From the IMG/VR virus record IMGVR_UViG_3300024308_000302, positions 226,158 to 290,157 of that record: a stretch of 64,000 bases of DNA; one strand, written 5' to 3'. Made by a program: the position numbers and the translations under genes. Of this stretch, positions 4,436 to 55,322 are shown piece by piece. The notes beneath the pieces were generated by a model. The model did no database searches. It saw nothing but the letters and a program-made list of their open reading frames with translations, and was not told the DNA's origin. Position 1 is the stretch's first letter, and each line of letters begins with the position of its first letter.

Positions 4436-5932
4436 TTATATTTTATTTTTTATCTTATTTTTAATTGTCTTCCCATCGTCAGTGCTCTTATAAAGTTCAA
4501 ATGCTTCATCGTAAGATTTAGCTTCTGTAATAGCAATAGCCTTTAAGAAGTCTCCATTTTGATATAGAGATAACAAATTTGGATAATTGTTTTTTATCAA
4601 GTTCGCTAACTCATCTGGTTTAATATATGTCAATAAACTACTGTTTGCAGTATGATCTAAATGAAGGACAATTTTATGTTCTTGAAGGTAATCTAAAACA
4701 GGAGCAATATAGGCAAGTTTTTCTTCTGCTGTAGCAGTATAGGATAAAGCTGAATCAATTACAAAACAAACTTTCAAATTATCTCGTTGTTCAATACATA
4801 AATTATGGTAATACATTTTAAAGAAACTATTATCACCAGAAATGTGAATGTAGTTATAATCACTCTCTAAATATCTTTTAGATAAAGAATGATAACCATA
4901 AGTTAGACTTGGTTCGGCTGACAAAATAGAAATCTTGGGATCTATTAAATCAAAATCAGCAGTCGTTTCAGACAAAGGAATACCAGAAGCTCTTATAGTG
5001 TTATCATCAATAACAATTTCCATCATAGAGTCTGAAACGGATTTAAACCATTCAGGACGATTATTTTCAATAAAACTAATAAAATCATTAAGAACTGGTG
5101 TATTTAGCATATCTTCTTCACTTTTAGCATTTGCCATTACACCAAGAACTACAGATTCTTTTGCCTGAAACAAATAGAAGTAATCATCAAATTCTTTATA
5201 GTAGTCATCCATAAGCTCTATATAAGTTTGATCAGCATCTATAACAGTAATGTTAAATTTATGCTCAAATTTATGTGGTCTTAAATTAGCATCTAAAGGA
5301 ATTTCTTTGTCCAACAAATCAATAATATTCTTAACGTAGAAGCTAACAGATTGAGCACTGACATCATTACTATTCATTACATCCTTAAAGCAATTAAAAG
5401 TATGACACAATTTAACAATAGGTAAATTTTGAATAGTATATGAAAAGTCAGTAAGATGATTTTTTTCACTAAATGCTAAATTGAATTTAGATATAAAATC
5501 TTTAAAACCATCACTATCATCTAATATATCATTAATAATTTTAACCACTTGTTTATCTGAATTATTTAAAATCGGAATTGCATTAAAATCGTCGTTACGT
5601 GTTGGCTTTATTGAATTTAAAGTATCAGCAAGAGCTAAAGAATATTCATAGGCTTCATTTTCGTCTTCTGTTGGTTGCTTGGAATTTAACTTGGACTCAA
5701 TAAATTTACCGTGTTCATTTTCTGTTAAAATTCTTTTTGATCTGTAACTTATGGCTAAAGGATTATCTTCTAAATCAGTTTTGGATAAACTGAGATCATA
5801 AAAGTCCTTTAATAATGTTGTTTTATAGAATTTTAAAGTTGACAATTCATTGAAATAGTTGTCATTAATAGAATTAGACAATTTAAATTCTTCACGCAAT
5901 TTTATAAAATCTTCTGCTTTTGCTTTTTTCAT
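4436..5932 (-). CDS. hypothetical protein with basic C-terminal tail
   Basis: 498 aa; ATGA overlap with upstream gene; ends KTIKNKIKNKI*. Confidence 0.85.
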   Translation of the reverse strand: MKKAKAEDFIKLREEFKLSNSINDNYFNELSTLKFYKTTLLKDFYDLSLSKTDLEDNPLAISYRSKRILTENEHGKFIESKLNSKQPTEDENEAYEYSLALADTLNSIKPTRNDDFNAIPILNNSDKQVVKIINDILDDSDGFKDFISKFNLAFSEKNHLTDFSYTIQNLPIVKLCHTFNCFKDVMNSNDVSAQSVSFYVKNIIDLLDKEIPLDANLRPHKFEHKFNITVIDADQTYIELMDDYYKEFDDYFYLFQAKESVVLGVMANAKSEEDMLNTPVLNDFISFIENNRPEWFKSVSDSMMEIVIDDNTIRASGIPLSETTADFDLIDPKISILSAEPSLTYGYHSLSKRYLESDYNYIHISGDNSFFKMYYHNLCIEQRDNLKVCFVIDSALSYTATAEEKLAYIAPVLDYLQEHKIVLHLDHTANSSLLTYIKPDELANLIKNNYPNLLSLYQNGDFLKAIAITEAKSYDEAFELYKSTDDGKTIKNKIKNKI

Positions 5933-7767
5933 GATAATCTCTGTTTTAATTTAACTTTGTTTTCTTTAATGACACCATTTTCTTTTAAGTAACTTTCAAG
6001 TGAATCAATGGTACTTTCTGTCATTGAGTGTTCTTCTCTGTTTGCATAAAGAGCTGCTTTTTGTGCAATTTCAATTTGTTTAGTAATATCTGAACCATAT
6101 AACTCATCATCATTTTTTAAGTGTTGAGCATAAGAAGAACCAGATTGATCAAGTGTAAAACCAATCATGGAATAAATGTCAGTAGAGCGTTTATTAAAGT
6201 CACATAGAATGTATTGTCGATTATTAACGTCCGTTACATACTGATCAAAATAATCCTCATCACGAACTATACACCAAGATTTTGAGCCGAAAGCAACACA
6301 TTGTTCATAATCTTTAACTTCAAAAACATAAATGCCATTATCAGCATATAACTTATTCAAACCAAATGATTCTAATTTTAAATCAATAACTTCTGGCGTA
6401 AATTGATCGAAATAATTCAATAATCCAGTTAGCATATTAATGACATCTTCATTGTTTTTCATGGCTGCAATTTTCTTACCAACAAAAGTTTGAAGTTGTG
6501 ATGAAGTAACTTTATTATCATACAATGATTTAAAATGTGGTTCGGTTTCTTCATTGAAGTGATGTTTATATTTTGAACTCAAAATAGTATAAGCAAATTG
6601 TTTTATTTTGTTTTTATATACAATATTATTAATTTTATCATCAATACCTTCAAAATTTTTATCTTTCAAAGAGTTTAAATCAAAATTATATTGTTTCAAA
6701 ACCGGGTAGTGCTCTAACAATGAATGAACTGTCTTGATAGCGTTTTCAACACCATCTTCATGTATCTTGTTTTTAAAGAATGGAATATGAGATGGTTTCT
6801 TTCTTAGAATAAATGAAACTGCATCACTATGAACATCACGATTAAATTGTTCTAATTCTTTGTTATTAGTGATTGTGTTATAAACTCCATTCTTTAAATA
6901 AGCAATGCTATTATCATTAAAAACTAAAACCTTATTTATTTTTTGAGAGGATGTAAGTTCAAGTGTAGCAAAGACTTCCTCAGAAATATTTTTAGTATGT
7001 ATAAACTTTTCTAAAGAGTTATCACTAGGAATTTTTGATTCTTGTTCTATGAATTGAACAGCCTGAGATATCAAATATGTAGGATCTAATTTGGTGATTT
7101 CGTTTTTTACTGTCTGAATATAATTATTATTAGCAGATTCATACTTATGATACGAATCATAAAAATCTTTAATATCTGGTATTGCATCAACTAATTTATT
7201 AATTGATTTTATAATGTACCCCTTATCTTCTTCATGTAAAAAAGATTTAGACAATTGTTCATTTAAAACATAATATGAGAATAAGAATTTATTAATCAAG
7301 ACATAGTTCTTTTGAAGATCAGCAGCAAAATCTTCAACTATTTCGCGTTTAGTAATCAAATCATCAGTTATAGATTCATCAAAATGATCAAACTCTTCCA
7401 TCTTTTCTAAATACAAGTTATACCATGCTTTATTTAACTCTTTATTATTTTTAACAACATCACGTACTTGCATTTTTTTAGTGTAATCTGGAGCAACTTT
7501 GCTATAATGATCAACAGCATCAGCAGTTGATTCAAATTTGATATGATCAGTCTCTTTTATTATATTTAAGATATTATCTAATCTATTTATGGTTTCAGAT
7601 AAAGGAACTGCGTGTTCATTGACAGAGTTTACTTTATTCTCTTTGAAGAAAGGTATAAATGTTAATTCGTTATATTTTAATTTAGCAGAACTGTAACTCC
7701 AAAGAGAACCACCAACTCTTAATTCATTAAGGCTATCAATTTTACTTAAAATTTCTTCAAGATTCAT
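5929..7767 (-). CDS. hypothetical protein, possible PcfJ-like C-terminal domain
   Basis: ~612 aa; FEVKDYEQCVAFGSKSWCI motif; basic tail KVKLKQRLS*. Confidence 0.75.
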   Translation of the reverse strand: MNLEEILSKIDSLNELRVGGSLWSYSSAKLKYNELTFIPFFKENKVNSVNEHAVPLSETINRLDNILNIIKETDHIKFESTADAVDHYSKVAPDYTKKMQVRDVVKNNKELNKAWYNLYLEKMEEFDHFDESITDDLITKREIVEDFAADLQKNYVLINKFLFSYYVLNEQLSKSFLHEEDKGYIIKSINKLVDAIPDIKDFYDSYHKYESANNNYIQTVKNEITKLDPTYLISQAVQFIEQESKIPSDNSLEKFIHTKNISEEVFATLELTSSQKINKVLVFNDNSIAYLKNGVYNTITNNKELEQFNRDVHSDAVSFILRKKPSHIPFFKNKIHEDGVENAIKTVHSLLEHYPVLKQYNFDLNSLKDKNFEGIDDKINNIVYKNKIKQFAYTILSSKYKHHFNEETEPHFKSLYDNKVTSSQLQTFVGKKIAAMKNNEDVINMLTGLLNYFDQFTPEVIDLKLESFGLNKLYADNGIYVFEVKDYEQCVAFGSKSWCIVRDEDYFDQYVTDVNNRQYILCDFNKRSTDIYSMIGFTLDQSGSSYAQHLKNDDELYGSDITKQIEIAQKAALYANREEHSMTESTIDSLESYLKENGVIKENKVKLKQRLS

Positions 7768-7841
7768 GTTTAAATTATTATTTGATTGTATTTTTATATT
7801 GTAACATATAAACAAGAAAAAAATAGACTAAAAAAAACAAT

Positions 7842-8593: not shown

Positions 8594-9283
8594 TTAATTG
8601 GCATCAGGTGTAATAACCTTGCCTACATATCGTTTACCAGTTGAATAATCAGCATAAAGCTCAAATACAACATAGGTATCGTGGTCTTTCAAATTATCCA
8701 GAATAAAACTTTTATCATTATGGTTTGGAACAAGAGGCCCAACCATTTCTTGAAGTGTTTCATTAGGCAAAATTGGAAGTAAATGGCTGTTAAAGTTATC
8801 TCTCTTAGTACATCCATAACCTTTATAGAGATTTTTACTATCAATAATGAATGTATTTAGATCTTCATCTGCTTTAAATTTCAGATAAACAAACTTGTCT
8901 TTGATAAGTTGATCACCATCATATAGAAAGTTTGAAGCAAAAGATTGAGCATCTACTTTTTTGCGGAAAGTATATTCATTAAAAAGATCAACAAGTGCTT
9001 GGCTATCAAATTCCGAAAATCCTCTTTGAACCAAATACTCTATTTTTTTTGAAAAAGAAGTATGAAAGTCAAAAGTTTCAAAATAATTATAACAAAGATC
9101 AAGATGAATTCTAAAACGATCTTTAATAATAAAGTCACTAGCAAAACACAAAATGGTAGATTCTGGTGTAGGCGAATGAAGGAATGCAACAGCAATGCTG
9201 CTATCTTGTTTACCTAAAATAACATTCAGCTTGGTAAGGAATTCGTTTTGTTTTTCATGAACTTCTGAAATATTTAGGCTCAT
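8594..9283 (-). CDS. hypothetical protein, paralog of 44007..44735
   Basis: EFLTKLNVILGKQDSSIA vs EFIGRLKAILNRGDSSIA. Confidence 0.8.
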   Translation of the reverse strand: MSLNISEVHEKQNEFLTKLNVILGKQDSSIAVAFLHSPTPESTILCFASDFIIKDRFRIHLDLCYNYFETFDFHTSFSKKIEYLVQRGFSEFDSQALVDLFNEYTFRKKVDAQSFASNFLYDGDQLIKDKFVYLKFKADEDLNTFIIDSKNLYKGYGCTKRDNFNSHLLPILPNETLQEMVGPLVPNHNDKSFILDNLKDHDTYVVFELYADYSTGKRYVGKVITPDAN

Positions 9284-9477
9284 TTAAAAGCTCCATCAAA
9301 ATGTGTGGTGTATTGAATGACATCAGAGATTATATCAAAAATGATGGAAAGAATCAAACAAAAAAAGAAGCATACGCCTCTTTCTGATTGCTATATAATG
9401 TCATTTTAAGGTTTCATATTATTGATATTTTTCTTTTGTAAGCATAGAAGACTAAGTAAATTTAAATAAATTTTAAA

Positions 9478-9939
9478 TTAAAGTACAAATAGTTGTTTAA
9501 ATTCTTCTTTAGTTAGCGTTCCATCAATATAGGCTTGTGTTACATTATAATAAGATCCATTTTTATATTTTTCTAATATTCTTTTACCACCAATATATTT
9601 AACAACTGTACTTATGTATAATAGTTTTTCAGGTATTTCTTCTGGTTCCTGTATATGCTCTTTTTTATGTTCATTTATAAAATAATCATACCTTTTACTG
9701 CTTTCTTCATCATCATAAAAATGAGTATGAAGGTAAAATTCTTCAATATTGTCAAACAGTTTAATAGAATCTGGATTAGAATCATGAATAAATAAATAAA
9801 CGCCACTTTTTTTACTGATAATACTATTACCTGAAAGATCTCGGGCTAAAACTTCAGAATTTCCATCAAGAAGAAATAACTCTGAGTTAAATTTTATATT
9901 ATCCTGATTAATATTAATAGTAAAATACTTTGATTTCAA
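9478..9939 (-). CDS. hypothetical protein (cassette cargo)
   Basis: 153 aa, TTG start after AGGAG. Confidence 0.7.
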   Translation of the reverse strand: MKSKYFTININQDNIKFNSELFLLDGNSEVLARDLSGNSIISKKSGVYLFIHDSNPDSIKLFDNIEEFYLHTHFYDDEESSKRYDYFINEHKKEHIQEPEEIPEKLLYISTVVKYIGGKRILEKYKNGSYYNVTQAYIDGTLTKEEFKQLFVL

Positions 9940-10029
9940 TTTAATTTACTCCTGAGTTTCTTAAAAATGAAGCTCCACCTTGATGACGTACACTATCATG
10001 TACAATTCTTTTAACTAAAGACATTGATT

Positions 10030-10078
10030 TTCCATCAGGCTCATGATGAAAGATAAGGTCATTTTTATTTACAAAGTC
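10030..10078 (-). pseudogene. relic fragment of the DUF5565-like ligase gene
   Basis: translates DFVNKNDLIFHHEPDG vs KFENEEGLVFHH-PDG in 15959..16612; about 31/43 nt identical by eye. Confidence 0.55.
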
Positions 10079-10085
10079 TATATTA

Positions 10086-10457
10086 TCAATCCCTGAATAA
10101 AGACTTTGTATAAAATCGATGAAGTTTATAAATTTCAGTAGCCCTTTCTTCTGTAATTGGAATAAGATTTAATAATTTAGACTTTTCTGAGTTATGTTCA
10201 AAAACATTATAAAACCAAGAACCAACAGCAGCAGTATAGGTATTCCCCGGAGCACATGAAACTCTTTTAAATTTTGGAATTGGATTGCCAAAACCATCAA
10301 CAGTAGTAACAGTTGAAATATAAAGAGCTGAATTATCTCCTTTATCACTATCAATATAAAACTTTGAACCCAAATAAGGATTGTCTTTATACAATTTAAT
10401 AACTTCAAGTAATACAAACAATAAAAATAGAGAGCAAATAATAAGAATAATATTCAT
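10086..10457 (-). CDS. N-terminally membrane-anchored protein (cassette cargo)
   Basis: 123 aa, hydrophobic N-terminus. Confidence 0.7.
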   Translation of the reverse strand: MNIILIICSLFLLFVLLEVIKLYKDNPYLGSKFYIDSDKGDNSALYISTVTTVDGFGNPIPKFKRVSCAPGNTYTAAVGSWFYNVFEHNSEKSKLLNLIPITEERATEIYKLHRFYTKSLFRD

Positions 10458-10730
10458 ATAGAAATCCTATAATAAAAAACAATAAATAGCAGTCTATCAT
10501 TATACTACTTATAAATTTCCTTCACATTATAACAAAAAATGGTAGATTTGTAAACAATTATAAAGAATATCACCTGTAAAATATTTGAAGGCAACTAGAA
10601 GCTTAGCCAAAGTAATAAAAAAGATGATTATATAAAGAACACTTTTGTTAAATGTAAAATTTTAATTTAACTTATTGATTGAATATAAAAAGTAGATATG
10701 ATTAAATAATTAAAGACAAAGGTAAAAGAA

Positions 10731-11042
10731 ATGGAATATATAAACGCTAACGGAATAAATAATAACTCAAATCAACCACAACCAGAAAATGAAGAAGTAG
10801 ATAAATGTATTAAATATTTAAAAAATATAATAGAAAATGATGTATATAACAAAACCACTAGCAGCTATGCTCTTAAACATTTAATAGACAAAGAAGAGAC
10901 ATATGTCTCAAATGGTGCATTTATAGAAGCATTGCGTATATTAAAAATGAGTTATGAAAGATGTTCTGAAGAGTCGCCAAATGTTTGGGTAAAATTTGAT
11001 ATAAAAGATTTAGAAAGAGCAATAAAAGAATACAAAAGTTGA
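10731..11042 (+). CDS. hypothetical protein, SYxLKH..YVSNGxFI family
   Basis: TSSYALKH..YVSNGAFIEA, a motif I recall from small phage/plasmid proteins. Confidence 0.7.
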   Translation: MEYINANGINNNSNQPQPENEEVDKCIKYLKNIIENDVYNKTTSSYALKHLIDKEETYVSNGAFIEALRILKMSYERCSEESPNVWVKFDIKDLERAIKEYKS

Positions 11043-11047
11043 TAAAA

Positions 11048-11155
11048 AAGAGGCTTCGGCCTCTTTTTATCATCACTCTACATTATTTTTTCTTCTTGCT
11101 ACGCTCATCAAACTTCTCAAATGTAGCATTTGCATATATAGAAAGATAATTTAAA
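11048..11155 (-). repeat. diverged copy of ligase 3' end + terminator + junction motif
   Basis: reads FEKFDERSKKKK* vs FGKFDSRNKNKK*; terminator aagaggcttcggcctctt; flanked by catatatagaaagat. Confidence 0.75.
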
Positions 11156-11159
11156 AAAA

Positions 11160-11741
11160 TTATGCAATTAGATCATATTTTAATTTATGATCATTGATTT
11201 TCTGTTTAAACATTTCAGTCATTTCATCTAATGTTAAAAGATGAAGATGTTCTTCTAGCTCATACCAACATCTAAAATCTTTTAAATAAGAGATAATCAT
11301 TTCTTTATCACAAGGACCAAGAAGAATATAATAAATTTTATACTTTTCACGACATGAAAACTTCTCAGTAATATACTCAGAATATTTTTTTAATTCTACT
11401 ACAAGTCTACCAATAAGTTCTTCATTTGCTTTTTTAACATTCACCGTTTTTTCTGAAATAGATTTAACTTCAATATTTAAATAATAATCCGCAAAATCGG
11501 CAATTTTAAATGCTTCTGACGACCTGAAATTACTTTCTCTCTTGTGTAACCGCACTTGGCTGTCTAAAACAAATGGAAATCTGTTGAAATATTCAGCTTT
11601 TACAGTCTCACCTTTTTTTAAAGCCATCTGATATAATTTTACTAATTTATCACGTTGATTAATAAAACAACCAATTTCTTTAAGCCTTTTTTCAACAATC
11701 TTCTCTGCTTTCTTTCCATTTATATACGAAACTTTAGACAT
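11160..11741 (-). CDS. putative PD-(D/E)XK nuclease
   Basis: N-terminal GKKAE helix; ADFADYYLNIEVKS. Confidence 0.5.
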   Translation of the reverse strand: MSKVSYINGKKAEKIVEKRLKEIGCFINQRDKLVKLYQMALKKGETVKAEYFNRFPFVLDSQVRLHKRESNFRSSEAFKIADFADYYLNIEVKSISEKTVNVKKANEELIGRLVVELKKYSEYITEKFSCREKYKIYYILLGPCDKEMIISYLKDFRCWYELEEHLHLLTLDEMTEMFKQKINDHKLKYDLIA

Positions 11742-11910
11742 TAGAATATAAACCTTTATATCTTGAATTTGAAAGTATTATAGCATGAAGACTGTTTTCA
11801 TGCTACTATTTTTTGTTGTTGGCTGAAATAAGATAGTCCATAGATTTAGTATTGAGTTGATTTTTTTTATTTTGATAATAAAATTTTAATAATTAATAAA
11901 AGAATAAAAG

Positions 11911-13041
11911 ATGACAGAAATTAAGAATATAAGAATATTATTAGAATACTATTTTAATAATTTTAAAGATGAATACGCAATAGCTACTTCAGTATTAATG
12001 TATGTAGATACAAGTAGCGAATTTGCAATAAAAAAAGAAATTGAGAAAAGAGTTGATCTTTTTGACAATAAAGATATAGACATTAAAGATAAATGTGAAA
12101 AAGTTTTTAATATTTTAGAAGATATAAAAGAAAATATTGGATTAAATTTTGGTAAAAACGAACAAATATTATATAATGAAAATAAATTTACATCAAGCTT
12201 CAAATTGCTTTCTGATTTTTGCAAAGGTGCTTCAATAATAAATTCTGCATATTCCAAGGAATATATAGATATGACAGGAAAAGGATATAAAAGAATGTTG
12301 TCACAATTATTGACAAAAATCAATAACAACTTAATTGAAGTCATTATTGAAAAAAAGAATAATAATCTTGATAGTATAGTAAAATCAGAAACTGATTATA
12401 TAAGTAATATGAAAAGTAATAAAACAAATAATGGCATAAAATTGCTTAATTATCATGCTTCAATAGAAAGGGATAGAAAAGAGTATATAGAAAATGAAAT
12501 AAAAAAAATAAATAATGATAATAAAATAATTGGTGAAGCAATAGGTTGTTTTTTGTTAAACTATCATAAAACATACGAATTTGAAATAGATCATTATACC
12601 GAATTAATAAAACACTTAAGAAAAAATATAGAGCCAAAAGAAAGAACTGAATTTGAAGGTGTGATACAAGCATCAGATTATGCTATTAGCTATTGGGCTA
12701 CTAATTTTGACAAAATAAAAAGTGAAGAACAAAAAATAAATGATGAATTTGAAAGTTGGAATTTAAAAAGCTTTCTTAGCTCTGTAGTTGCAGGAAAATT
12801 ATTGACACAGAAAAATATTGACGAATTAACTTTTATAAGTGAGTTAAGGTTTATTAACAACAATAACGGGCAAGAAATGAACAGTATTGAAGTTAAAAAA
12901 ATATTTGATAAAGCAATGGAAGAAAAACAAAAAATTAAACAAAAAGTAAAAGTAAAGGAACCAGAAATACTAAAAGAAATAGAAAAAAAAGAAGAAAAAA
13001 TAGGTTTTATAAAAAGAGGCATAAATTGGTTTTATAAATAA
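11911..13041 (+). CDS. hypothetical helical protein (cassette cargo)
   Basis: 376 aa, very A-rich; ends KIGFIKRGINWFYK. Confidence 0.75.
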   Translation: MTEIKNIRILLEYYFNNFKDEYAIATSVLMYVDTSSEFAIKKEIEKRVDLFDNKDIDIKDKCEKVFNILEDIKENIGLNFGKNEQILYNENKFTSSFKLLSDFCKGASIINSAYSKEYIDMTGKGYKRMLSQLLTKINNNLIEVIIEKKNNNLDSIVKSETDYISNMKSNKTNNGIKLLNYHASIERDRKEYIENEIKKINNDNKIIGEAIGCFLLNYHKTYEFEIDHYTELIKHLRKNIEPKERTEFEGVIQASDYAISYWATNFDKIKSEEQKINDEFESWNLKSFLSSVVAGKLLTQKNIDELTFISELRFINNNNGQEMNSIEVKKIFDKAMEEKQKIKQKVKVKEPEILKEIEKKEEKIGFIKRGINWFYK

Positions 13042-13043
13042 AG

Positions 13044-13200
13044 AAGAGGCAGAAGCCTCTTATGTTTTTGGCAGTTTCTCCGAATATTCACGCTTCTTCT
13101 AAGAAGTGGTGACACCCAAATAACCGTCCAAGGTTACATCATTTTTTGTGCTTGTTGCGACTGTCAAACTTACCAAAGCATGGAAGCCCGAAATCCTTTC
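13044..13200. repeat. 157 bp direct repeat of 15865..16020 (ligase 3' end, UTR, terminator)
   Basis: identical except 2 substitutions and a 1-nt indel. Confidence 0.97.
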
Positions 13201-13471
13201 ATATGTAGAAAGATCATGTAAAGTTTTATTTATCATACTCATTAAAATATTGAATTTACTTACTGTACAGAATATCTTAAAACTAAGATGTATCTGATAT
13301 ACAACATATTTTTATAAATATATTTTTGAAATTAATTAATGAAGATTATAATTATAAAAAAAGGAAAATAAAATCAATGAAATGCACTATTGATTTTCAA
13401 AAAAATAAAAAGTATCATAGTAAAAACACTAATTTTTTTTAGATAAGTATAGAAATAATTAAGGAGATATT

Positions 13472-13660
13472 ATGACAACTAAAGCAGAAATATATAACGA
13501 AAAAGATGAGTTAATAAATACTTTTGAAGGTGTTAATTTAATTCCAATAAAAGATGGAAGTTCAATATTCGCAAATAGTTCATCGCAAAGACCAGTATTA
13601 TATTATAATTTAAAACCGGGCCATTATATTAAGAATATATTAACATCAATAACTAAATAA
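13472..13660 (+). CDS. small hypothetical protein (cassette cargo)
   Basis: 62 aa, AAGGAG RBS. Confidence 0.7.
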   Translation: MTTKAEIYNEKDELINTFEGVNLIPIKDGSSIFANSSSQRPVLYYNLKPGHYIKNILTSITK

Positions 13661-13681
13661 ACAAGATAAAAATAGAATAAA

Positions 13682-13795
13682 AAAGAGGCTACTGCCTCTT
13701 TTTTTTACCATCATACTATATCAATTTTTCTTCTTATAACGTTCATAAAAATTGAAGAATGAAGCAAAACTAAAATCTTTAAATATGTCAAAAGT
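13682..13795 (-). repeat. diverged copy of ligase 3' end + terminator + junction motif
   Basis: 13777..13721 reads DFSFASFFNFYERYKKKN*, same 19-codon register as DFGLPCFGKFDSRNKNKK*; flanked by atatgtcaaaag. Confidence 0.65.
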
Positions 13796-13805
13796 AATTA
13801 AACTT

Positions 13806-15443
13806 TTAAATAACATCAATAACAAGATTAATTGCAAAAGAATTATTAAGAAGATCTGATTTTAAGTCAGGATAACCAGCATAAATATTATTTGTTATAG
13901 CCACTCTAATTGGTTCATATAAATTATCTTCTAAATATGTTTTTAAATTATCATCTTGTATCGAATCTATGATTTCGTCAAATAAATCATTAAAATCTTC
14001 TAAGCAATAATTTAAGATCTCGCTTTTACTAATAGTTGAAAGAAAAGGAATATTGAAATTTTTCAAATTTAAAGAATTTCCACCTTTGGACAAATAAATA
14101 TAAACACAATTTTTAAAAGAATAAAATAATTTATAGTATAAAATATAATTGACTAATTTTTTTCGATAAACAGCTTTCATTTTATTACTGATAACTTTTC
14201 TTTTGGCTGCTTTATATTTATTAGTAGAGAAAAAGAGTTCCAAGAAACTTGGGTTATCTTTCAAAGAATCAGAATAGGCATTAAATAAATCATAAATAAT
14301 ATCTATGTTATTTATTTTTTTGAGCATATTTTTAGGACAATAATATATGCCAATTTTATTTGACGACAAAGAATCGCAATTATTGTTGATATTTTTAAGA
14401 TGCCATTTTTTGTTTTGTTTTTTTAATTCATTAAAATAAGTATTTTTTGCTTTAATTTCTTTATTTTTTTCTTTCATTGTTTTTAAAATGGTGCTCTCTT
14501 TATATATTGGTGGATTACACAGTATACAAACGTTATTTCTGGCATATGATTTTCTTATGCCTTTTATTGAACAATTAACACAATTAATAGTTTTTAACTT
14601 TAAAAATTTTCTACAAATGTAACAAGAAAAAGAATCTGATGATCTTGATAATTTTATCAGGGTTTTATAATCATGATAATGCTCTCCAAAAAAATTAACA
14701 CAATTTGGACATTTAACTTTATCGATTACAACAGGTATTCTGAAAATAACATCATTATATGAAGAATGATTAAAAAGAATAATAAAGTGTTTTAAATCAT
14801 CATAAAGAAAATAAGTAGGCAATTTATTTATGCTTAAATGTTTATTTATTGTATACAAAGGCATTAAAGAAACAGCAGCTACAAAATAATTAGAACGTGC
14901 CAAATTGGTAAGATTATTAATCATATCTTTCCTAAAATATAAAAAATAATCTATTAAAAATTGTTTTTTCTTACTCAAAACAAAATAACAAACAATATAG
15001 TCATTTAAAATTTTATTTAAATCATTTTTAATATTTTCTACATTGAAAAGGTATGAAGTGTGGCTGTCAGCATTTCGCTTTGAATTAATATCATAAAATA
15101 ACAAATTGAAATCATTATAATTAATTGGATTTTTTTCGAAAAAATCATTACCATGTAGACTCTTAACAATATCAATTAGAATCGATGCATTTACTGATCT
15201 TATGGTATTACCTGTTTCAGAAGAGATATTAGCGTTTACATCTTTTTCAACAACTAAGCCTCGTAATGTGAGTTCACAATAATCATGTAAAGATGAATAA
15301 AGCTCTGTATAAAATAAATTAATATTACGCTTCCCAATATAACCAGAATCTATAAATGCTGAAATATTGAAAAAATTCTCAAAGAAAATGGCATTAGCTT
15401 TATTATAGAAAAGATCTGGATCTGAATTAAACATTTTACTCAT
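13806..15443 (-). CDS. putative HEPN-domain / zinc-ribbon protein
   Basis: AGGAGG RBS before MSKMF; RNADSH (R-N-x3-H); CPNC, CYIC, CVNC, CILC. Confidence 0.55.
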   Translation of the reverse strand: MSKMFNSDPDLFYNKANAIFFENFFNISAFIDSGYIGKRNINLFYTELYSSLHDYCELTLRGLVVEKDVNANISSETGNTIRSVNASILIDIVKSLHGNDFFEKNPINYNDFNLLFYDINSKRNADSHTSYLFNVENIKNDLNKILNDYIVCYFVLSKKKQFLIDYFLYFRKDMINNLTNLARSNYFVAAVSLMPLYTINKHLSINKLPTYFLYDDLKHFIILFNHSSYNDVIFRIPVVIDKVKCPNCVNFFGEHYHDYKTLIKLSRSSDSFSCYICRKFLKLKTINCVNCSIKGIRKSYARNNVCILCNPPIYKESTILKTMKEKNKEIKAKNTYFNELKKQNKKWHLKNINNNCDSLSSNKIGIYYCPKNMLKKINNIDIIYDLFNAYSDSLKDNPSFLELFFSTNKYKAAKRKVISNKMKAVYRKKLVNYILYYKLFYSFKNCVYIYLSKGGNSLNLKNFNIPFLSTISKSEILNYCLEDFNDLFDEIIDSIQDDNLKTYLEDNLYEPIRVAITNNIYAGYPDLKSDLLNNSFAINLVIDVI

Positions 15444-15864
15444 AAAACCTCCTAAATTAAAATTTATATCCAATATTACATAATATATCATAAATAAAGT
15501 AGTCTTTAAAAAAATAGAGTCTTTTTGAACTATGAAAATAGGTAATAAAAATAAAACCAACTATTTTTATATCTTTATATCATATAAATTAATAAAAAAT
15601 ATACAAAAAAGACATATAACGTGTAATATATTATAAATAAAGTAAATTGTTAATACAAATATATTATTGAAAAATGAAAATATTTTTTACGTTTTTTATA
15701 AATCTAAACGAAGATTTATAAAGTTAATTTATATATAATAATGCTTATTTTATAAGCTTATTTCTTAAGTTTTTGAACAAATACATATAAAACAGCAATT
15801 TTAGAACATTTTTTATCAATATATGTAAAAATAAAAACGTGAAGTTTTTTTAATAGAAATAAAA

Positions 15865-16020
15865 AAGAGGCCGAAGCCTCTTATGTTTTTGGCAGTTTCT
15901 CCGAATATTCACGCTTCTTCTAAGAAGTGGTGACACCCAAATAACCGTCCAAGGTACATCATTTTTTGTTCTTGTTGCGACTGTCAAACTTACCAAAGCA
16001 TGGAAGCCCGAAATCCTTTC
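15865..16020. repeat. 156 bp direct repeat of 13044..13200
   Basis: covers last 62 nt of ligase gene, 3' UTR and terminator. Confidence 0.97.
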
Positions 16021-16612
16021 TCCTTAATTTAGCATAACGCCCATCAGGATGGTGGAAAACAAGTCCTTCTTCGTTTTCAAACTTGTCTTCGAAAAGTTTT
16101 TTCAAACCTTCAAAAGAGAAGTCAGTCACTTCAAACGCAACACTACCATGTTCCCAGAGTTCGTGGCGAGTAAGGTTGTAGGGGTTGCCATTAACCTTTG
16201 GGCCAACAAGTTCGTAGGTTTTGCCATCCTTCAACTCTCCAGAATTTGCAAGAGCCTCAAGGTGAAACTTGTCCTCTGGACCTTCACCAACAGGAACCCA
16301 GTGTGGGAAATGCAGGCTATGAGCAGCAGGCTTAGCTTCACAAGGAATAGCACCTGCTGGAACCTCATTGAACATATGGTCTTCTGGTACAAACTTATCG
16401 CCCAATTTACGAGCCAATTTCGAGAAATTCGATTTCAGCTTGCGGTCAAAGCGTTTAAACAGTTTGCCATCCTTGAAGTAGGCAGACGAACCATCAAACT
16501 TGATAGTAGCCTTGCCTTCACCACGAACAACCCATTCCGCACCCGGAGTAACAACATCGGTAGCAAGATCAGTATTACGGTCAATCACGAACAGAGTTTT
16601 GATTTTTTTCAT
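15959..16612 (-). CDS. DUF5565 / C12orf29-like ATP-dependent (RNA) ligase
   Basis: KFDG adenylation motif, TYELVGPKVNGNP, EGLVFH..AKLRRKDFG. Confidence 0.75.
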   Translation of the reverse strand: MKKIKTLFVIDRNTDLATDVVTPGAEWVVRGEGKATIKFDGSSAYFKDGKLFKRFDRKLKSNFSKLARKLGDKFVPEDHMFNEVPAGAIPCEAKPAAHSLHFPHWVPVGEGPEDKFHLEALANSGELKDGKTYELVGPKVNGNPYNLTRHELWEHGSVAFEVTDFSFEGLKKLFEDKFENEEGLVFHHPDGRYAKLRRKDFGLPCFGKFDSRNKNKK

Positions 16613-16692
16613 GTTAAATCTCCTAAATAGATTAAAGTAGTTTTCGAATCCAACCGCCTCTATTTAAGGGTTTCCCCTCTGTTTGTGAAGCT

Positions 16693-16721
16693 AGTATAGC
16701 AAAACACGACCTATTGTGCAA
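16693..16721 (-). promoter_or_regulatory. sigma70-like promoter of ligase gene
   Basis: TTGCAC-17 nt-TATACT with extended -10 TG. Confidence 0.7.
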
Positions 16722-16754
16722 GATTTTTTTTAACCAATGATATCGAAATTACTA

Positions 16755-17402
16755 TCAAATAATTAACATCCTGAGTGTAATTAGATTATTTTCAAATTCA
16801 CTAGTATTAATACGATAAGCACCATCAAAGTACCATTCTGGAAACAATTCCTTTGTAATTTCTTTATCATCATTGAGAAATACTTCAAGAAGCCTAAATT
16901 CATCATCTAATGGACAAAGCATATTACGATGCTTAGTAACGTTCAAAACAATATCTTGACTTGATTTTGATTTAAGATAATGAAGCGATTGATATTCAAA
17001 GTTGCTATCATATGAAATTGAGATTTTGTAACCTAACATGCCAGATTTAGAGCATCTTTTTACAATCGTATAAGATAAATCGACATTTGATATAATACCA
17101 TTATTGTCAGTAGTAACTATACAATTACTTCCAAAAACAATATTACTATTAAGCTGTTTTAAAAAATGAGAAATAGGCAATATCGGACTTAAACCAGTTA
17201 GCTCGATTTTTTGATTGTTGTAGGCATAAAACTTATCAAAATTTTTGATATTCTGTTGTTCGCTCATAAAAGAACTGTCAAATTTATTGAATACCAATCG
17301 TGCAATATTGCTTACAAAAGATTGAGCTTGTTTCTTTTTTTTCATAGCTGCATCATAGTTTTCTTGATAAACACTATAATTTGATTTTAAGGTAGGCGTC
17401 AT
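16755..17402 (-). CDS. hypothetical protein with C-terminal signature, related to 55936..56898
   Basis: ELFPEW..AYRINTSEFENNLITLRMLII*. Confidence 0.8.
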   Translation of the reverse strand: MTPTLKSNYSVYQENYDAAMKKKKQAQSFVSNIARLVFNKFDSSFMSEQQNIKNFDKFYAYNNQKIELTGLSPILPISHFLKQLNSNIVFGSNCIVTTDNNGIISNVDLSYTIVKRCSKSGMLGYKISISYDSNFEYQSLHYLKSKSSQDIVLNVTKHRNMLCPLDDEFRLLEVFLNDDKEITKELFPEWYFDGAYRINTSEFENNLITLRMLII

Positions 17403-38529: not shown

Positions 38530-40378
38530 ATGAACTACTCCGCCCTGAAGGACGAAGTTTCTTGGTTCGGAACCAAGTCTTCTCGCTGACGTTCATTGTC
38601 AACTTCAAATAAAGCTATCAGCTTCATTCGCACGGTTTCTCTTTTCATCTTTCTTGGCACGTATTGGCCATTTTTTAACTCATGAAAAGCTAATCGAAGA
38701 ACTTCTTCGAATATTCTGTTTCTTATATTCTTGCAAGCATTATTATCTGCATCATCTATATGACCACATGCATTACAAGTAAAACTTCTTCCTTTTCTAA
38801 CTGTATGCTCCACGCATTTACAGTTAGAACAAGTTTTAGAAGTATAGCTTGGTGTGGTCAGATGAACTCTGATGCCTTTGTTATTGGCTTGCTCTTTAAA
38901 CCAATCTTTGATACTTGAAAGTCTCAATAATCTAATTAACTTTGAATATTTTACATTCAAAGTTTCATCTTTAATAAAAGAAGCTTTACATTGAGACAAA
39001 TTCAAATCTTCAAGTACAATATCGGTAATGCCATTTTTAATTAAGTCTTTTAATATTGTCGATATTAAAGACTTGAAATGGAATTCAACACCTAATAATA
39101 GTTTATTGAATTTCTTTTGTTCTATTGTTGATAATTGTTTGAATCCTTTGTTCTCAAAGGATTTTAATTTTTCTACAATTGCTTCTATATAACTTCTATC
39201 ATAATCTTTAAGTTCTTCACGATCATGAAAAGCAATTGTACAAAAATTAGAAGCAACATTTAAATCAATACCACAAATTTGTTTTTTATTTATAACACTA
39301 TCTTTTTCTAATGGTTTAAAATATTCTTTATCATCTTCATAAGTCAAACCAATATCAAGATGATTTTTGCTATTCAAACGGACAGTATGAATAGCATTAA
39401 GGTTAAAATTGTTTATATTTTGGTGATATTTAGAATTGAAGGCTAAAGGAACATGAATGTGTTCCTTACCAATTCTAAAATTATACCAATATTTATACTC
39501 ATTTGATTCATCAATATAAATATGAGAATGTTTAGTTTGACCAATTTGTGGTATTTTCATGTAAGAGCCAGTTGAATATACAATTGGCTCTTTCATATAT
39601 GACAATATTCTTTGTTTTCTATTTATAAGTAATTGTCTAACTCTATTCCAATAAGGTTTTTTCCTTAATGCTTCAATGCTGTTATTGAAATCAATAACAG
39701 ATTGAAGTTTGAGAGGATCTTTAACTTCTAAAGACTTTAATGAAGAATCAAGGCTTGATTCTTCAATAAACATCAACCAGTTCATTATTTTAGTTAAAGA
39801 AGAATTTCTTGAAATAAAGGTGGTGTCTTTGACATCTCCTTTTTTATGTAAAATTTGACCATCTTTTGAAGTTACATTACGTTTATAGTAAGTAATTTTA
39901 AATTCTTTTTGGAGAATAAACTTATTGTTCGAAATAAGTTTATCCATCCAATTAGAATAGAAGTCCATAGATTGATGAAATATTTTTTGAATTTCCCAAG
40001 AATAGAGATTAGGGGTTTTAAATTGCTTAAAACGAGAAGCCAGAACTTTTTTAGAATCTTCATTACAAAGCATTGCTTTGTGATTGAAGATATAGTATGA
40101 AATATTGTTTTTAAAGTTTTTAACAAAATCAAAATGTTGGATCAGGGTATTTTTCTTCTTATGATTGAGAATCGACGAAGAAGAAATACGTTTAGTTTTG
40201 ATATTTTTTTTATCAGAAGATCCAAAAGCCATAAGATTCCTTAAAATATATGCTTGCAAATTATAGACCAAGAGAAATAAAAAAGCAAGCAAAAAATGTA
40301 AGAAATCAAAAAAGAAGTAAATTTTTATCCCCGACCTGAAGGAAGAGGTTTTAAATTTTATAATTTGATTTCAATAGG
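38530..40378 (-). mobile_element. tnpB-only IS200/IS605-family element (IS1341-like)
   Basis: subterminal hairpins aaaacctcttccttcaggtcgggga (LE) and gaaacttcgtccttcagggcggag (RE); inserted 3' of TTAT, ends TCAT; no TSD; no tnpA. Confidence 0.85.
38535..40232 (-). CDS. tnpB: TnpB RNA-guided endonuclease (565 aa)
   Basis: RuvC GIDLN / LEDL / DADNNA; YTSKTCSNC..CNACG zinc finger. Confidence 0.9.
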   Translation of the reverse strand: MAFGSSDKKNIKTKRISSSSILNHKKKNTLIQHFDFVKNFKNNISYYIFNHKAMLCNEDSKKVLASRFKQFKTPNLYSWEIQKIFHQSMDFYSNWMDKLISNNKFILQKEFKITYYKRNVTSKDGQILHKKGDVKDTTFISRNSSLTKIMNWLMFIEESSLDSSLKSLEVKDPLKLQSVIDFNNSIEALRKKPYWNRVRQLLINRKQRILSYMKEPIVYSTGSYMKIPQIGQTKHSHIYIDESNEYKYWYNFRIGKEHIHVPLAFNSKYHQNINNFNLNAIHTVRLNSKNHLDIGLTYEDDKEYFKPLEKDSVINKKQICGIDLNVASNFCTIAFHDREELKDYDRSYIEAIVEKLKSFENKGFKQLSTIEQKKFNKLLLGVEFHFKSLISTILKDLIKNGITDIVLEDLNLSQCKASFIKDETLNVKYSKLIRLLRLSSIKDWFKEQANNKGIRVHLTTPSYTSKTCSNCKCVEHTVRKGRSFTCNACGHIDDADNNACKNIRNRIFEEVLRLAFHELKNGQYVPRKMKRETVRMKLIALFEVDNERQREDLVPNQETSSFRAE

Positions 40379-54534: not shown

Positions 54535-54602
54535 AAGAACAATCCTTTTACTGTTTAATTGAAAGAATTATAGCATGATGATGCTAACCATGCAACATTT
54601 TT

Positions 54603-55322
54603 TTAGATAGACATCATTTCTACCAAAAGTAATGAGGATTTTGTTTTCCTAACCAAATCATATTTTTCTTTAAGATATAGGTCATAAAAACATTTTTCAA
54701 AAGAAAAATGAGGATCTTTATTAATTGAAACATTCTTTTTTAAATGATCAGGTATATCATTAGAATCATTTTTATTAATCGGCATTAAATATTGCACATT
54801 GAACTTGTTGTTAGAAGTATTAAGATTCACCCAAATCAAGCGTCTGTTTAGCTCAAGATCCCACTTATATTTAATAACATTGTCTCTTAATCTTATAGTA
54901 ATAGAAAGTCCATCATAAAATAAAGCTTCAATGTTATTATTATACTCTTCACAACCTACATAATTTGTTGAGATCTCTTTTTCAAGTTTAAACTTTTTGA
55001 TATTTTCAAGAAAGGCATTTTTTATACTGCCATCATTATGAATGAAATGAGATGAAACGTCTGGTGTGATGTCAAAAATCTCCAACTCATTATCAAGACA
55101 ATATCGTACAATAAAGTCAAAGTTATATTGAGTAGTTATAGAAAATTCGAGAGCAGTAGGACCATTAGATGACGATGTACCATACTTAGGATTAACCCTA
55201 ATATCTAAAATGATTAAATCAGAATTAAAAACTAAAGATAATTTTGATTTAATCCAATACTTTTTATCATCATCACTGACAGTCCAAGATGCTTGGTTAA
55301 GTTTTTTTTGTATCTTATCCAT
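54603..55322 (-). CDS. hypothetical protein with C-terminal signature
   Basis: ends LLLVEMMSI*. Confidence 0.8.
   Translation of the reverse strand: MDKIQKKLNQASWTVSDDDKKYWIKSKLSLVFNSDLIILDIRVNPKYGTSSSNGPTALEFSITTQYNFDFIVRYCLDNELEIFDITPDVSSHFIHNDGSIKNAFLENIKKFKLEKEISTNYVGCEEYNNNIEALFYDGLSITIRLRDNVIKYKWDLELNRRLIWVNLNTSNNKFNVQYLMPINKNDSNDIPDHLKKNVSINKDPHFSFEKCFYDLYLKEKYDLVRKTKSSLLLVEMMSI

What the first reader, a model, noticed from the sequence alone, without database searches (positions are those of the whole stretch)
9361..16020. Integrase-free tandem cassette array at the 3' end of the DUF5565-like ligase gene
Seen: the ligase 3' end plus terminator recurs downstream of the gene as a near-exact copy (13044-13200 vs 15865-16020), as two diverged in-register copies (11083-11121 FEKFDERSKKKK*; 13721-13777 DFSFASFFNFYERYKKKN*; gene DFGLPCFGKFDSRNKNKK*), and possibly as a weak one at ~9361-9456. 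The 11.1 kb copy shows synonymous-type changes (GAT/GAC, CGT/CGC, TAA/TGA), as expected for a once-functional alternative tail. Between copies lie very AT-rich cargo blocks: 545 aa HEPN/Zn protein; 62 aa ORF; PD-(D/E)XK + 376 aa pair; 153/123/103 aa group. Established: elements that integrate into a gene often carry a replacement 3' end. Inference: repeated insertion at one codon position built an integron-like accessory or defence array, with the recombinase acting in trans (none is in this window). Divergence is not monotonic with distance, so some blocks may have arrived together.
Basis: partly seen in the sequence, partly recalled or inferred. Interest (0 to 1): 0.85.

Follow-up and report, generated by a model that had tools for sequence, protein, structure and literature searches.

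The report
Stacked mobile islands behind ligase gene
Several mobile DNA islands have inserted one after another at one codon near the end of a giant phage's RNA ligase gene, each bringing a spare gene ending; the copies here have lost their recombinase genes, which a relative's island at the same site still has.

Summary
The ligase gene (15959-16612, minus strand) is followed by three further copies of its last ~18 codons, each with a terminator. One is near-identical (B, 13035-13201). Two are diverged (C, 13721-13780; D, 11082-11128). A profile built only from relatives' ligase ends scores them at E 2e-12, 9e-5 and 4e-9. The proposed fifth copy (9361-9456) is only a terminator.

Each fragment is preceded by a conserved element end, AACTTTACAT-N9-ACATAT. 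It abuts the Lys-Asp codons where the fragments B and C begin.

A relative (L183) has the same end (31/35 identical) and a 69% homologue of the 545-aa cargo protein. They lie in an 11.4-kb insertion at the same ligase codon. That insertion carries four overlapping genes: an ordinary tyrosine recombinase, a degenerate one, a large one and a small protein. This is the layout of SE/GInt integrative elements.

The window therefore holds a tandem accretion of three recombinase-less islands of this family, each with a replacement ligase tail. No recombinase gene was found in the window, and no close relative of the L183 integrase in the 290-kb viral contig.

I rate it a new variant of a known kind, in a phage-like genome.

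The parts
15959..16612 (-). RNA ligase gene (RLIG1/DUF5565 family), the host gene of the islands. Its present last 18 codons (tail A) belong to the newest island.
   Evidence: Pfam RLIG1 3.3e-9; phrog_14301 RNA ligase 5e-47; 312 homologues
16013..16019 (-). Insertion point: the Lys-Asp codons (AAAGGAT) after the last conserved ligase motif. Repeat A/B, fragment C, and the fragments in L099, L103 and L183 all start here. Alternative tails in relatives diverge right after it.
15855..16021 (-). Copy A: functional ligase tail, structured 3' UTR and terminator (15865-15882).
15819..15848 (-). Left-arm motif AACTTCACGT-N10-ACATATAT just after terminator A. The same motif follows the tail and terminator, upstream of the recombinase genes, in L183 (28/32) and L174 (34/46).
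13806..15443 (-). Cargo of unit 1: 545-aa protein with Cys-rich zinc-ribbon-like stretch, function unknown. A 69% homologue lies inside the recombinase-bearing element of L183.
13781..13806 (-). Right end of unit 1 (degenerate copy of the element-end motif).
   Evidence: 25/33 identical to the L183 right end
13679..13780 (-). Fragment C: displaced ligase tail (13721-13780, KDFSFASFFNFYERYKKKN*), 17-nt spacer and terminator (13679-13704).
   Evidence: nhmmer 18.6 bits, E 8.8e-5; 77/105 to the L007 ligase end
13228..13678 (.). Body of unit 2, a miniature unit of about 0.5 kb. Its only ORF is a doubtful 62-aa one (13472-13660, plus strand).
13200..13227 (-). Right end of unit 2: best-preserved element end, AAAACTTTACATGATCTTTCTACATATG. 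ACTTTACA occurs only here in the 64-kb window.
   Evidence: 31/35 identical to the L183 right end
13035..13201 (-). Fragment B: displaced ligase tail, structured UTR and terminator (13044-13061), 97% identical to copy A.
11911..13041 (+). Cargo of unit 3: 376-aa protein, no recognisable family. It converges on terminator B.
11160..11741 (-). Cargo of unit 3: 193-aa protein, probably a PD-(D/E)XK nuclease fold (a lead, not proven).
   Evidence: ESM Atlas structure hits RmuC and PDDEXK_11, TM 0.52-0.58; D...EVK motif read in the sequence; AF2 model unusable
11133..11165 (-). Right end of unit 3. It overlaps the stop codon of the 193-aa gene.
   Evidence: 34/42 identical to the internal right end of L183 and 24/27 to its terminal right end
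11048..11128 (-). Fragment D: the oldest, probably original, ligase tail (ATFEKFDERSKKKK*), with spacer and terminator (11048-11065). It is about 14 nt shorter at its 5' side than B and C.
   Evidence: nhmmer 32.6 bits, E 3.8e-9, model positions 15-61; 70/85 to the L095 ligase end
9478..11042 (.). Three small genes (103 aa on the plus strand; 123 and 153 aa on the minus strand) between fragment D and the conserved flank. They are either ordinary variable genes or an older unit with no recognisable end.
   Evidence: (103-aa homologue in L011)
9362..9385 (-). Terminator of the 153-aa gene.
8594..9283 (-). Conserved distal flank (229-aa protein). Its homologue lies 4.8 kb downstream of the ligase in L095.

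Best explanation
The region is a tandem accretion of three recombinase-less integrative islands at a single attachment site, the Lys-Asp codons 18 codons before the stop of the RNA ligase gene. The islands belong to a family whose autonomous members carry a four-gene tyrosine-recombinase module laid out like SE (intA-tfp-intB-srap) and GInt (ginABCD) elements. Each island enters the gene at the core AAAGAT. It supplies its own tail, stop codon and terminator, so the ligase stays intact, and it pushes the previous tail downstream. The displaced tail remains as a fragment directly behind the island's right end (AACTTTACAT-N9-ACATAT). Reading outward from the gene: unit 1 is tail A plus the 545-aa gene; unit 2 is tail C plus about 0.5 kb; unit 3 is tail B plus the 376-aa and 193-aa genes; then comes the original tail D. 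Shown here: the fragments, their common start, the shared right end, the shared cargo gene, the occupied and unoccupied alleles in relatives, and the absence of recombinase genes in the window. Inferred: that the recombinase module catalysed these insertions; the order of events; and that the window units arose by loss of the module or by capture of ligase-like tails. Later reshuffling by ordinary homologous recombination between the tail-plus-terminator repeats is likely. A and B are 97% identical over 167 nt. The L103/L105 indel lies between 55-nt repeats of this kind.
For: 1) Four copies of the ligase end, three displaced, are far above chance. 2) B and C begin at the same codons. So do fragments downstream of ligases only 47-61% identical to the window's (L099, L103, L183). 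Each is preceded by the same bipartite motif, which is unique in the window and gives 3 true hits out of 4 in about 4 Mb (both strands counted) of fetched loci. 3) In L183 the ligase body is 96% identical to P0017 up to ...RKKD and then switches to a foreign tail. 11.4 kb downstream lies the motif followed by KDFGFEFGLPDPRNKKTIRNKM*, which is P0017's own tail. This is an occupied/unoccupied allele pair. 4) The L183 insertion starts with four overlapping genes of 394, 560, 591 and 125 aa. The first and third hit Phage_integrase and have R..HxxR..H..Y; the second has lost Arg I. The same module occurs in L211 and L212/L213. It is distantly similar (E 2e-11 and 3e-8) to a Pseudomonas plasmid operon with the same gene order, sizes within about 50 aa and 4-nt overlaps. 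5) The L183 element contains a 69% homologue of the window's 545-aa cargo protein followed by a right-end copy. The window's right ends are 31/35, 34/42 and 25/33 identical to L183's. 6) The motif after terminator A matches the one upstream of the recombinase genes in L183 and L174. 7) Left ends of L211 and L212 are inverted copies of the right-end motif: 19/21 and 22/28, with 0-2 of 500 shuffles reaching the score. 8) An identical alternative-tail module (96 nt or more) sits on ligase bodies that differ (86% versus 75% identity to the query), joined exactly at AAAGAT|ATG. 9) Tail D resembles the tail of the syntenic unoccupied relative L095 (70/85), as expected for the oldest, outermost copy.
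Against: No recombinase gene is in the window. No close relative of the L183 integrase was found in the 290-kb viral contig, though that scan rests on two peptide patterns and the rest of the 1.54-Mb contig was not read. The window units begin with ligase-like tails, not with the inverted-repeat left end seen in L183, L211 and L212, so they lack one canonical end and may be immobile. How a unit acquires a ligase-like tail is not explained by data. Fragment D starts about 14 nt later than B and C. A and B are near-identical while C between them is diverged, which a simple one-by-one history does not predict. No excision product or empty site could be looked for. Recombination by this module has never been assayed.
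Confidence: 0.66

Rival explanations
1. Recombinase-independent cassette shuffling, as with PeSL elements. The tail-plus-terminator segment is a portable patch of homology. The phage's own recombination system excises circles between two such patches and reinserts them at the ligase end of co-infecting relatives. The common fragment start and the motif are inherited from one founding illegitimate event.
For: Strain-level differences begin exactly at terminators (L014 versus the window; L011 versus L012). The L103/L105 indel is flanked by 55-nt direct repeats of tail end plus terminator. A and B are 167 nt at 97% identity, ample for phage recombination. The same C(UUCG)G terminator recurs 8 times in the window and across the clade. 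PeSL mini-circles are documented in T4-type phages (PMC2839356).
Against: It does not explain why the element end is conserved (28/34 to 31/35) between genomes whose ligases are only about 50-60% identical to the window's. It does not explain why that end forms inverted repeats with the left ends of recombinase-bearing elements at non-ligase sites. It does not explain why an element with a full recombinase module sits at exactly this codon. No sigma-70-type promoter excess was found. It most likely acts as a secondary process on units first placed by site-specific recombination.
Confidence: 0.16
2. Endonuclease-driven homing of the WHO-element type. A nuclease gene next to the ligase cuts sensitive ligase alleles at the Lys-Asp codons. 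Repair copies the nuclease gene together with a resistant replacement tail, and the old tail stays behind as the right-hand homology arm.
For: The anatomy matches WHO clusters at yeast FBA1: a full gene plus 3' fragments that begin at one site, separated by genes and pseudogenes (bioRxiv 10.64898/2026.08.13.744650; PMC7282813). In L103 a T5orf172/CapR-type homing endonuclease gene (phrog_681 4e-51, CapR 1e-11) lies directly upstream of the fragment and is absent from the 95% identical L105. In the window a probable PD-(D/E)XK protein lies directly upstream of fragment D.
Against: The cargo genes next to the fragments are unrelated to each other, and unit 2 has no plausible nuclease. The conserved feature is a DNA end shared with tyrosine-recombinase elements, not a nuclease gene. 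The nuclease nature of the 193-aa and 545-aa proteins is unproven. In L103 the endonuclease gene may be cargo or a secondary invader.
Confidence: 0.13
3. Assembly artefact or chance similarity in AT-rich DNA.
For: The A/B duplication is seen only in one assembly (L001 and L093 match over the 20.7 kb fetched and, by their IMG numbering, come from one metagenome). Reads could not be examined.
Against: C and D are diverged copies that match other lineages' ligase alleles, which an assembler cannot invent. The same architecture occurs in independent samples and assemblers (L099, L103, L183). Assemblers collapse repeats rather than create 2.8-kb spaced ones.
Confidence: 0.02

Closest known systems
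SE (strand-biased circularizing integrative elements) and GInt genomic islands of Proteobacteria (PMC10214605, PMC5385486)
   Same: Autonomous relatives (L183, L211, L212) have four overlapping genes in the SE order: an ordinary tyrosine recombinase, a recombinase-fold protein with lost catalytic residues, a large tyrosine recombinase and a small protein of about 125 aa. Insertion is site-specific, and GInts are reported at the ends of the ssb and ribonucleotide reductase genes. They have imperfect terminal inverted repeats and variable cargo after the recombinase module. There is weak but significant similarity to a Pseudomonas plasmid operon of the same layout.
   Different: The host replicon is a giant phage-like contig, not a proteobacterial chromosome or plasmid. 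No close relative of the integrase exists in 185,579 species genomes. The target is a phage RNA ligase gene, and the element supplies a replacement coding tail. The window copies have no recombinase genes at all. Circles, strand bias and the 6-bp footprint are untested.
Tandem accretion of integrative elements and CIMEs (cis-mobilizable elements), e.g. ICESt1/ICESt3-related arrays in streptococci (reviewed in PMC5704250)
   Same: Recombinase-less decayed elements keep their attachment sites and pile up in tandem at the 3' end of one target gene. Each junction contains the end of that gene.
   Different: Those are conjugative or mobilizable elements of bacterial chromosomes with single integrases. 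Here the units are 0.5-2.2 kb, lie in a phage-like genome and belong to a four-gene recombinase family.
WHO homing elements at FBA1 in Torulaspora yeasts (PMC7282813; bioRxiv 10.64898/2026.08.13.744650)
   Same: The layout is nearly identical on paper. Each arrival replaces the 3' part of an intact host gene. Old 3' fragments that begin at one site accumulate downstream between cargo genes, and the newest unit is next to the gene.
   Different: WHO elements move by LAGLIDADG endonuclease cleavage and gene conversion in diploid nuclei. Here the conserved component is a recombinase-type DNA end, and the autonomous relative carries tyrosine recombinases.
PeSL promoter-terminator cassettes of T4-type phages (PMC2839356, PMC4122927)
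   Same: Small genes of unknown function sit in a hyperplastic region of a large phage. They are bounded by repeated terminator-containing motifs at which indels between strains begin.
   Different: PeSLs are generic promoter plus stem-loop motifs scattered over the genome and act by homologous recombination. Here the repeat contains a piece of one specific gene plus a specific element end.
Integrons
   Same: An array of short, mostly promoterless-looking cassettes sits at one platform, and the cassettes themselves lack a recombinase.
   Different: There is no IntI, attI or attC. The platform lies inside a coding sequence, and each unit carries a replacement gene end.
Phage 21 and e14 integration into icd of E. 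coli (from my own knowledge, not checked here)
   Same: The integrating element carries a substitute 3' end for the protein-coding gene it enters, with mostly silent differences.
   Different: Those are single prophages in a bacterial chromosome, each with one integrase, not an array inside a phage genome.

Membership tests
SE/GInt-class integrative elements | Four-gene recombination module: two catalytic tyrosine recombinases, one recombinase-fold protein lacking catalytic residues, and one small helper protein | tested here: not met
   Not met in the window: no Phage_integrase hit among 71 ORFs. Met in the relative L183 at the same ligase codon, and in L211 and L212. The window units are therefore at most non-autonomous derivatives.
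SE/GInt-class integrative elements | Site-specific insertion with recognisable junctions; target often the end of a gene | tested here: met
   Fragments start at the same Lys-Asp codons in window B and C and in L099, L103 and L183. L183 and P0017 form an occupied/unoccupied pair.
SE/GInt-class integrative elements | Conserved, imperfectly inverted terminal sequences | tested here: inconclusive
   Right ends are conserved (31/35, 34/42, 28/34). Left ends of L211 and L212 are inverted copies (19/21, 22/28). The window units show right ends only.
SE/GInt-class integrative elements | Sequence homology to described SE or GInt proteins | tested here: inconclusive
   There is 22-23% identity (E 2e-11 and 3e-8) to two adjacent genes of a four-gene operon on Pseudomonas plasmid pF011, which has the same order, sizes within about 50 aa and overlaps. 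I could not tell whether that operon is classed as SE or GInt.
SE/GInt-class integrative elements | Circular intermediate from attL x attR recombination; 6-bp footprint | not testable with these tools
Integron | IntI integrase gene with adjacent attI and cassette promoter | tested here: not met
   No tyrosine recombinase in the window. The array starts inside the ligase coding sequence.
Integron | attC recombination site at the end of each cassette | tested here: not met
   Each unit ends in the element-end motif plus a ligase tail plus an ordinary C(UUCG)G terminator, which also ends unrelated genes at 7847, 21718 and 43973. No Rfam family matches.
WHO-type homing elements | Host-gene 3' fragments beginning at one site, interleaved with element genes, downstream of an intact host gene | tested here: met
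WHO-type homing elements | Each unit encodes a homing endonuclease (LAGLIDADG with zinc finger) that cuts sensitive alleles | tested here: not met
   No LAGLIDADG or any nuclease family hit in the window cargo. There is only an Atlas lead to a PD-(D/E)XK fold for the 193-aa protein. Unit 2 has no candidate. L103 has a T5orf172/CapR-type endonuclease gene.
PeSL cassettes | Repeated composite early promoter plus stem-loop flanking ORFans, with indels at these motifs | tested here: inconclusive
   Shared terminators and indel boundaries at them are present. There is no promoter excess (67 found against 69.6 expected), and the repeat contains gene-specific sequence.
CIME / accretion arrays | Recombinase-less units that retain att-type junctions, in tandem at the 3' end of the target gene | tested here: met
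   Mobilisation in cis or trans was not testable.

The most novel reading that the evidence does not exclude
The recombinase-less units, down to the roughly 0.5-kb unit 2 (replacement tail, terminator and right end), may be live cassettes. The four-gene recombinases of co-infecting relatives would excise and insert them in trans. That would make a phage-borne gene-cassette exchange system whose docking site is the last 18 codons of an RNA-repair ligase gene. It would work like an integron but be built from SE/GInt-type parts.
Probability: 0.25. Interest if true: 0.8.

Novelty: new variant of a known kind. Interest (0 to 1): 0.68.

Why it matters
SE and GInt elements are described only from bacterial chromosomes and plasmids, chiefly Gamma- and Betaproteobacteria. 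Site-specific islands that nest inside virus genomes are rarely documented.

This family appears confined to very large phage-like contigs. It has 46 integrase homologues in a 5.8-billion-protein collection but none close in 185,579 species genomes or in IMG/VR. It targets a phage RNA-repair gene without breaking it.

If the model is right, it shows how giant phages gain and stack accessory genes at a safe docking site. One relative's island carries a GmrSD-like nuclease and a methylase. It also gives a defined attachment site and a minimal right end of about 30 bp that can be tested directly.

It is also a convergent counterpart of yeast WHO clusters, reached by a different enzyme.

Tried and rejected
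- Group I/II intron or other known RNA: Rfam found nothing in 9000-16800 at E up to 1. In L099, L014 and L174 it gave only two sub-threshold small-RNA matches (E 0.25-0.42, far below their gathering scores) and no intron family. L105 also lacks the second 'exon', so this was rejected.
- IS200/IS605-type single-strand transposition (a TnpB-like gene lies at 38.5 kb): the sequences left of the junctions are not conserved, so this was rejected on reading the junctions.
- The element-end motif as a general promoter: ACTTTACA occurs once in the window. An exact-pattern scan of IMG/VR gave 8 hits, all in coding DNA without a ligase. That variant of the pattern does not match window copy B, which has AAAGG instead of AAAGA.
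- Cargo function: Pfam, PHROGs, PADLOC and NCBIfam gave nothing significant for the window cargo proteins.
- ESM Atlas gave only a PD-(D/E)XK lead for the 193-aa protein, and zinc-ribbon neighbours below 0.9 for the 545-aa protein.
- AlphaFold models were useless (pLDDT 40 and 36), so no fold search was run.
- The HEPN reading of the 545-aa protein rests on a single RNADSH motif and is not supported further.
- DNA or protein similarity to GenBank phages: none for the region or the 628-aa neighbour.
- Single-sequence nhmmer self-searches in 167 ligase loci found only near-identical copies and one new case, L099.

Full report
**The replicon.** The window is part of IMG/VR contig IMGVR_UViG_3300024308_000302 (290 kb). 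That contig is in turn a stretch of JGI contig Ga0247725_1000001 (1.54 Mb). It is 22-39% GC, carries three tRNA genes, and its genes lie mostly on the minus strand. Of 71 ORFs of 120 aa or more, only 14 Pfam families are hit. These include RLIG1, a DEDDh exonuclease, Acb1, cREC_REC, LigT, MazG and a TnpB-like domain. None is an integrase, resolvase or DDE transposase. Ribosome-binding sites and intrinsic terminators are of the bacterial type. I treat it as a giant phage-like replicon; its exact nature is not settled.

**Checking the observation.**
- The ligase gene is 15959-16612 on the minus strand (Pfam RLIG1; phrog_14301 RNA ligase 5e-47).
- Its last 20 codons, a 3' UTR and the terminator (copy A, 15855-16021) recur at 13035-13201 (copy B), with 4 mismatches and one indel in 167 nt.
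- To test the diverged copies without circularity, I built a nucleotide profile from the ligase tails of four relatives only (L006, L007, L010, L017), leaving out terminators and all window sequence.
- In the 64-kb window this profile finds exactly four strong hits, all on the minus strand: A (43.2 bits), B (43.1), D at 11082-11128 (32.6 bits, E 3.8e-9) and C at 13721-13780 (18.6 bits, E 8.8e-5).
- The best of 30 block shuffles scored 8.2 bits.
- The layout of C and D is tail, stop, about 17 nt, then terminator. This is the layout of uninterrupted ligase genes in relatives.
- D is 70/85 identical to the ligase end of L095, and C is 77/105 identical to that of L007.
- The terminator stem AAGAGGC-NNNN-GCCTCTT is generic. 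It occurs 8 times in the window, also after unrelated genes, and throughout the clade. The terminators alone prove nothing; the coding tails do.

**Relatives.**
- The ligase has 312 homologues. Their C-terminal tails vary, while the body is conserved up to ...RRKD.
- A strain with a 98.5% identical ligase and the same A-type tail (L014/L015) has completely different genes from the 3' edge of the terminator onward.
- L095 (82% ligase identity) keeps the upstream gene order, the ligase and a homologue of the 229-aa protein (8594-9283). Between them lie 4.8 kb of unrelated genes, with no ligase fragments and no element ends.
L095 looks like an unoccupied site.

**A conserved element end.**
- Immediately upstream of fragment B lies AAAACTTTACATGATCTTTCTACATATG, which abuts the Lys-Asp codons. 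ACTTTACA occurs nowhere else in the window.
- The same bipartite motif (CTTTACAT, 9 nt, ACATAT), followed at once by AAAGA and a ligase tail, lies downstream of ligases that are only 52% and 47% identical to the window's (L099, L103).
- With a relaxed pattern there are 4 hits in about 4 Mb of fetched loci, counting both strands. Three of them are these junctions.
- Degenerate copies precede C and D.
- In every case the fragment starts at the Lys-Asp codons; D starts about 14 nt later.
- Independently, an identical alternative-tail module (MCKMERNG..., 96 nt or more identical) is joined at AAAGAT|ATG to ligase bodies that differ. Their identities to the query are 86% and 75% (L016, L174).
- This codon is therefore a recurrent junction.

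**The recombinase link.**
- The 545-aa cargo protein of unit 1 has a single homologue outside its own sample (P0122, 69% identity).
- Its contig (L183) shows a ligase whose body is 96% identical to P0017 up to ...VRKKD and then switches to the MCKMERNG tail.
- After the terminator come four genes with 4-nt overlaps, of 394, 560, 591 and 125 aa. Proteins 1 and 3 hit Phage_integrase and carry R..HxxR..H..Y. Protein 2 hits weakly and has lost the first arginine. Protein 4 has no family.
- Then comes the 531-aa homologue, followed by a right-end copy and a terminator, then five more genes.
- At 16072 lies AAACTTTACATTATCTTTCTATATAT, followed by a reading frame for KDFGFEFGLPDPRNKKTIRNKM*, which is exactly the tail of P0017.
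- P0017 and L183 are thus unoccupied and occupied alleles of one ligase, with an 11.4-kb insertion at the codon in question.
- The L183 right end is 31/35 identical to the sequence before window fragment B. The internal right end is 34/42 identical to the sequence before D.
- The motif after window terminator A (15819-15848) matches the one that precedes the recombinase genes in L183 (28/32) and L174 (34/46).
- The same four-gene module occurs in L211 and L212/L213 at other target sites. There the left ends are inverted copies of the right-end motif: 19/21 and 22/28, with 0 and 2 of 500 shuffles reaching the score.

**What the module is.** Its order and sizes match the SE core (intA, tfp, intB, srap) and resemble GInt ginABCD. 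Both are site-specific elements that need all four genes, and GInts are reported at the ends of the ssb and nrdA genes (PMC10214605, PMC5385486). Proteins 2 and 3 are weakly but significantly similar to adjacent genes of a four-gene operon on Pseudomonas plasmid pF011, whose products are 376, 563, 637 and 171 aa and whose genes overlap by 4 nt. The integrase family has 46 members in the large protein collection. It has no close relative in IMG/VR, including the window's own 290-kb contig, nor in 185,579 species genomes.

**Interpretation.** The window holds three recombinase-less units stacked at one attachment site:
- unit 1: tail A, terminator, left-arm motif, the 545-aa gene and a right end;
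- unit 2: tail C, terminator, about 0.5 kb and the best-preserved right end;
- unit 3: tail B, terminator, the 376-aa and 193-aa genes and a right end;
- then the original tail D.

This is the accretion pattern known for decayed integrative elements (CIMEs) at the 3' ends of bacterial genes (PMC5704250), here with SE/GInt-type machinery and inside a phage-like genome.

Not shown:
- that the module made these insertions;
- whether the units still move;
- how they came to carry ligase-like tails rather than the inverted-repeat left end;
- why A and B are nearly identical while C is not.

Homologous recombination between tail-plus-terminator repeats probably reshapes the array. In L103 versus L105, a unit made of a T5orf172/CapR-type endonuclease gene, a right end and a full ligase fragment is present or absent between 55-nt repeats.

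**Rivals.** A purely homology-driven, PeSL-like process (PMC2839356) explains the strain-level indels. It does not explain the conserved end, its inverted copies at other sites, or the recombinase-bearing element at this codon. Endonuclease-driven homing of the WHO type gives the same anatomy (PMC7282813; bioRxiv 10.64898/2026.08.13.744650) and has the L103 endonuclease in its favour. However, the cargo genes are unrelated to each other, unit 2 has none, and no window cargo protein could be shown to be a nuclease. An integron is excluded by its defining features.

**Limits.** Both structure predictions failed. The full 1.54-Mb contig was not available.

Noticed in passing
whole window; L093: The 290-kb IMG/VR 'virus' is a piece of a 1.54-Mb JGI contig. 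Ligase and integrase relatives sit on contigs of 0.6-2.2 Mb. Only 14 Pfam families are hit among 71 ORFs of 120 aa or more. Whether this is an exceptionally large phage, a chimeric assembly or another kind of replicon is open.
   Followed up: partly
window 15883-15958 and 13062-13136 (minus strand): Tail copies A and B, and strain L014, carry a 57-nt GC-richer insert between the stop codon and the terminator that other relatives lack. It folds into a long hairpin (-34.1 kcal/mol, z -4.0, no shuffle as good). No Rfam match.
   Followed up: partly
window 38535-40292 (minus strand): A 585-aa TnpB-like ORF (Cas12f1-like TNB domain, 2e-15) with no TnpA partner detected. A similar gene lies near the recombinase-bearing element in L212.
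   Followed up: no
window ORFs of 120 aa or more (not localised individually): Single ORFs hit Acb1 (anti-CBASS), cREC_REC (cyclic-phosphate processing), LigT 2H phosphoesterase, MazG, ASCH and a dual-specificity phosphatase. Together with the RNA ligase this suggests an RNA-repair and counter-defence neighbourhood.
   Followed up: no
window 11769-11814 and 54559-54604: A 46-nt repeat (76% identical) containing an 11-bp hairpin. One copy lies in the divergent intergenic region of unit 3, the other 43 kb away between ordinary genes. It may be a regulatory motif of the host genome present inside the cargo.
   Followed up: partly
L103 11332-13101 versus L105: Two 95% identical Tara Oceans contigs differ by a 1.66-kb unit: a 525-aa T5orf172/CapR-type homing endonuclease gene plus the element end plus a full ligase tail fragment. 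It is bounded by 55-nt direct repeats. L105 keeps only a truncated tail fragment.
   Followed up: yes
L212 15528-17537: The cargo of a recombinase-bearing element of the same family includes a GmrSD_N/HNH nuclease and an EcoRI-type methylase. Defence-type cargo therefore occurs in this family, although none was recognised in the window.
   Followed up: no
L007/L098 12435-19061: In a relative, the pair homologous to window genes 5929-7815 and 4436-5932 is tandemly duplicated directly downstream of the ligase and an M17 peptidase gene.
   Followed up: no
window 7847, 9366, 11049, 13045, 13684, 15866, 21718, 43973: Eight terminators share the stem AGAGGC/GCCTCT, five of them with a UUCG loop read on the minus (coding) strand. 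The same hairpin ends ligase genes across relatives.
   Followed up: partly
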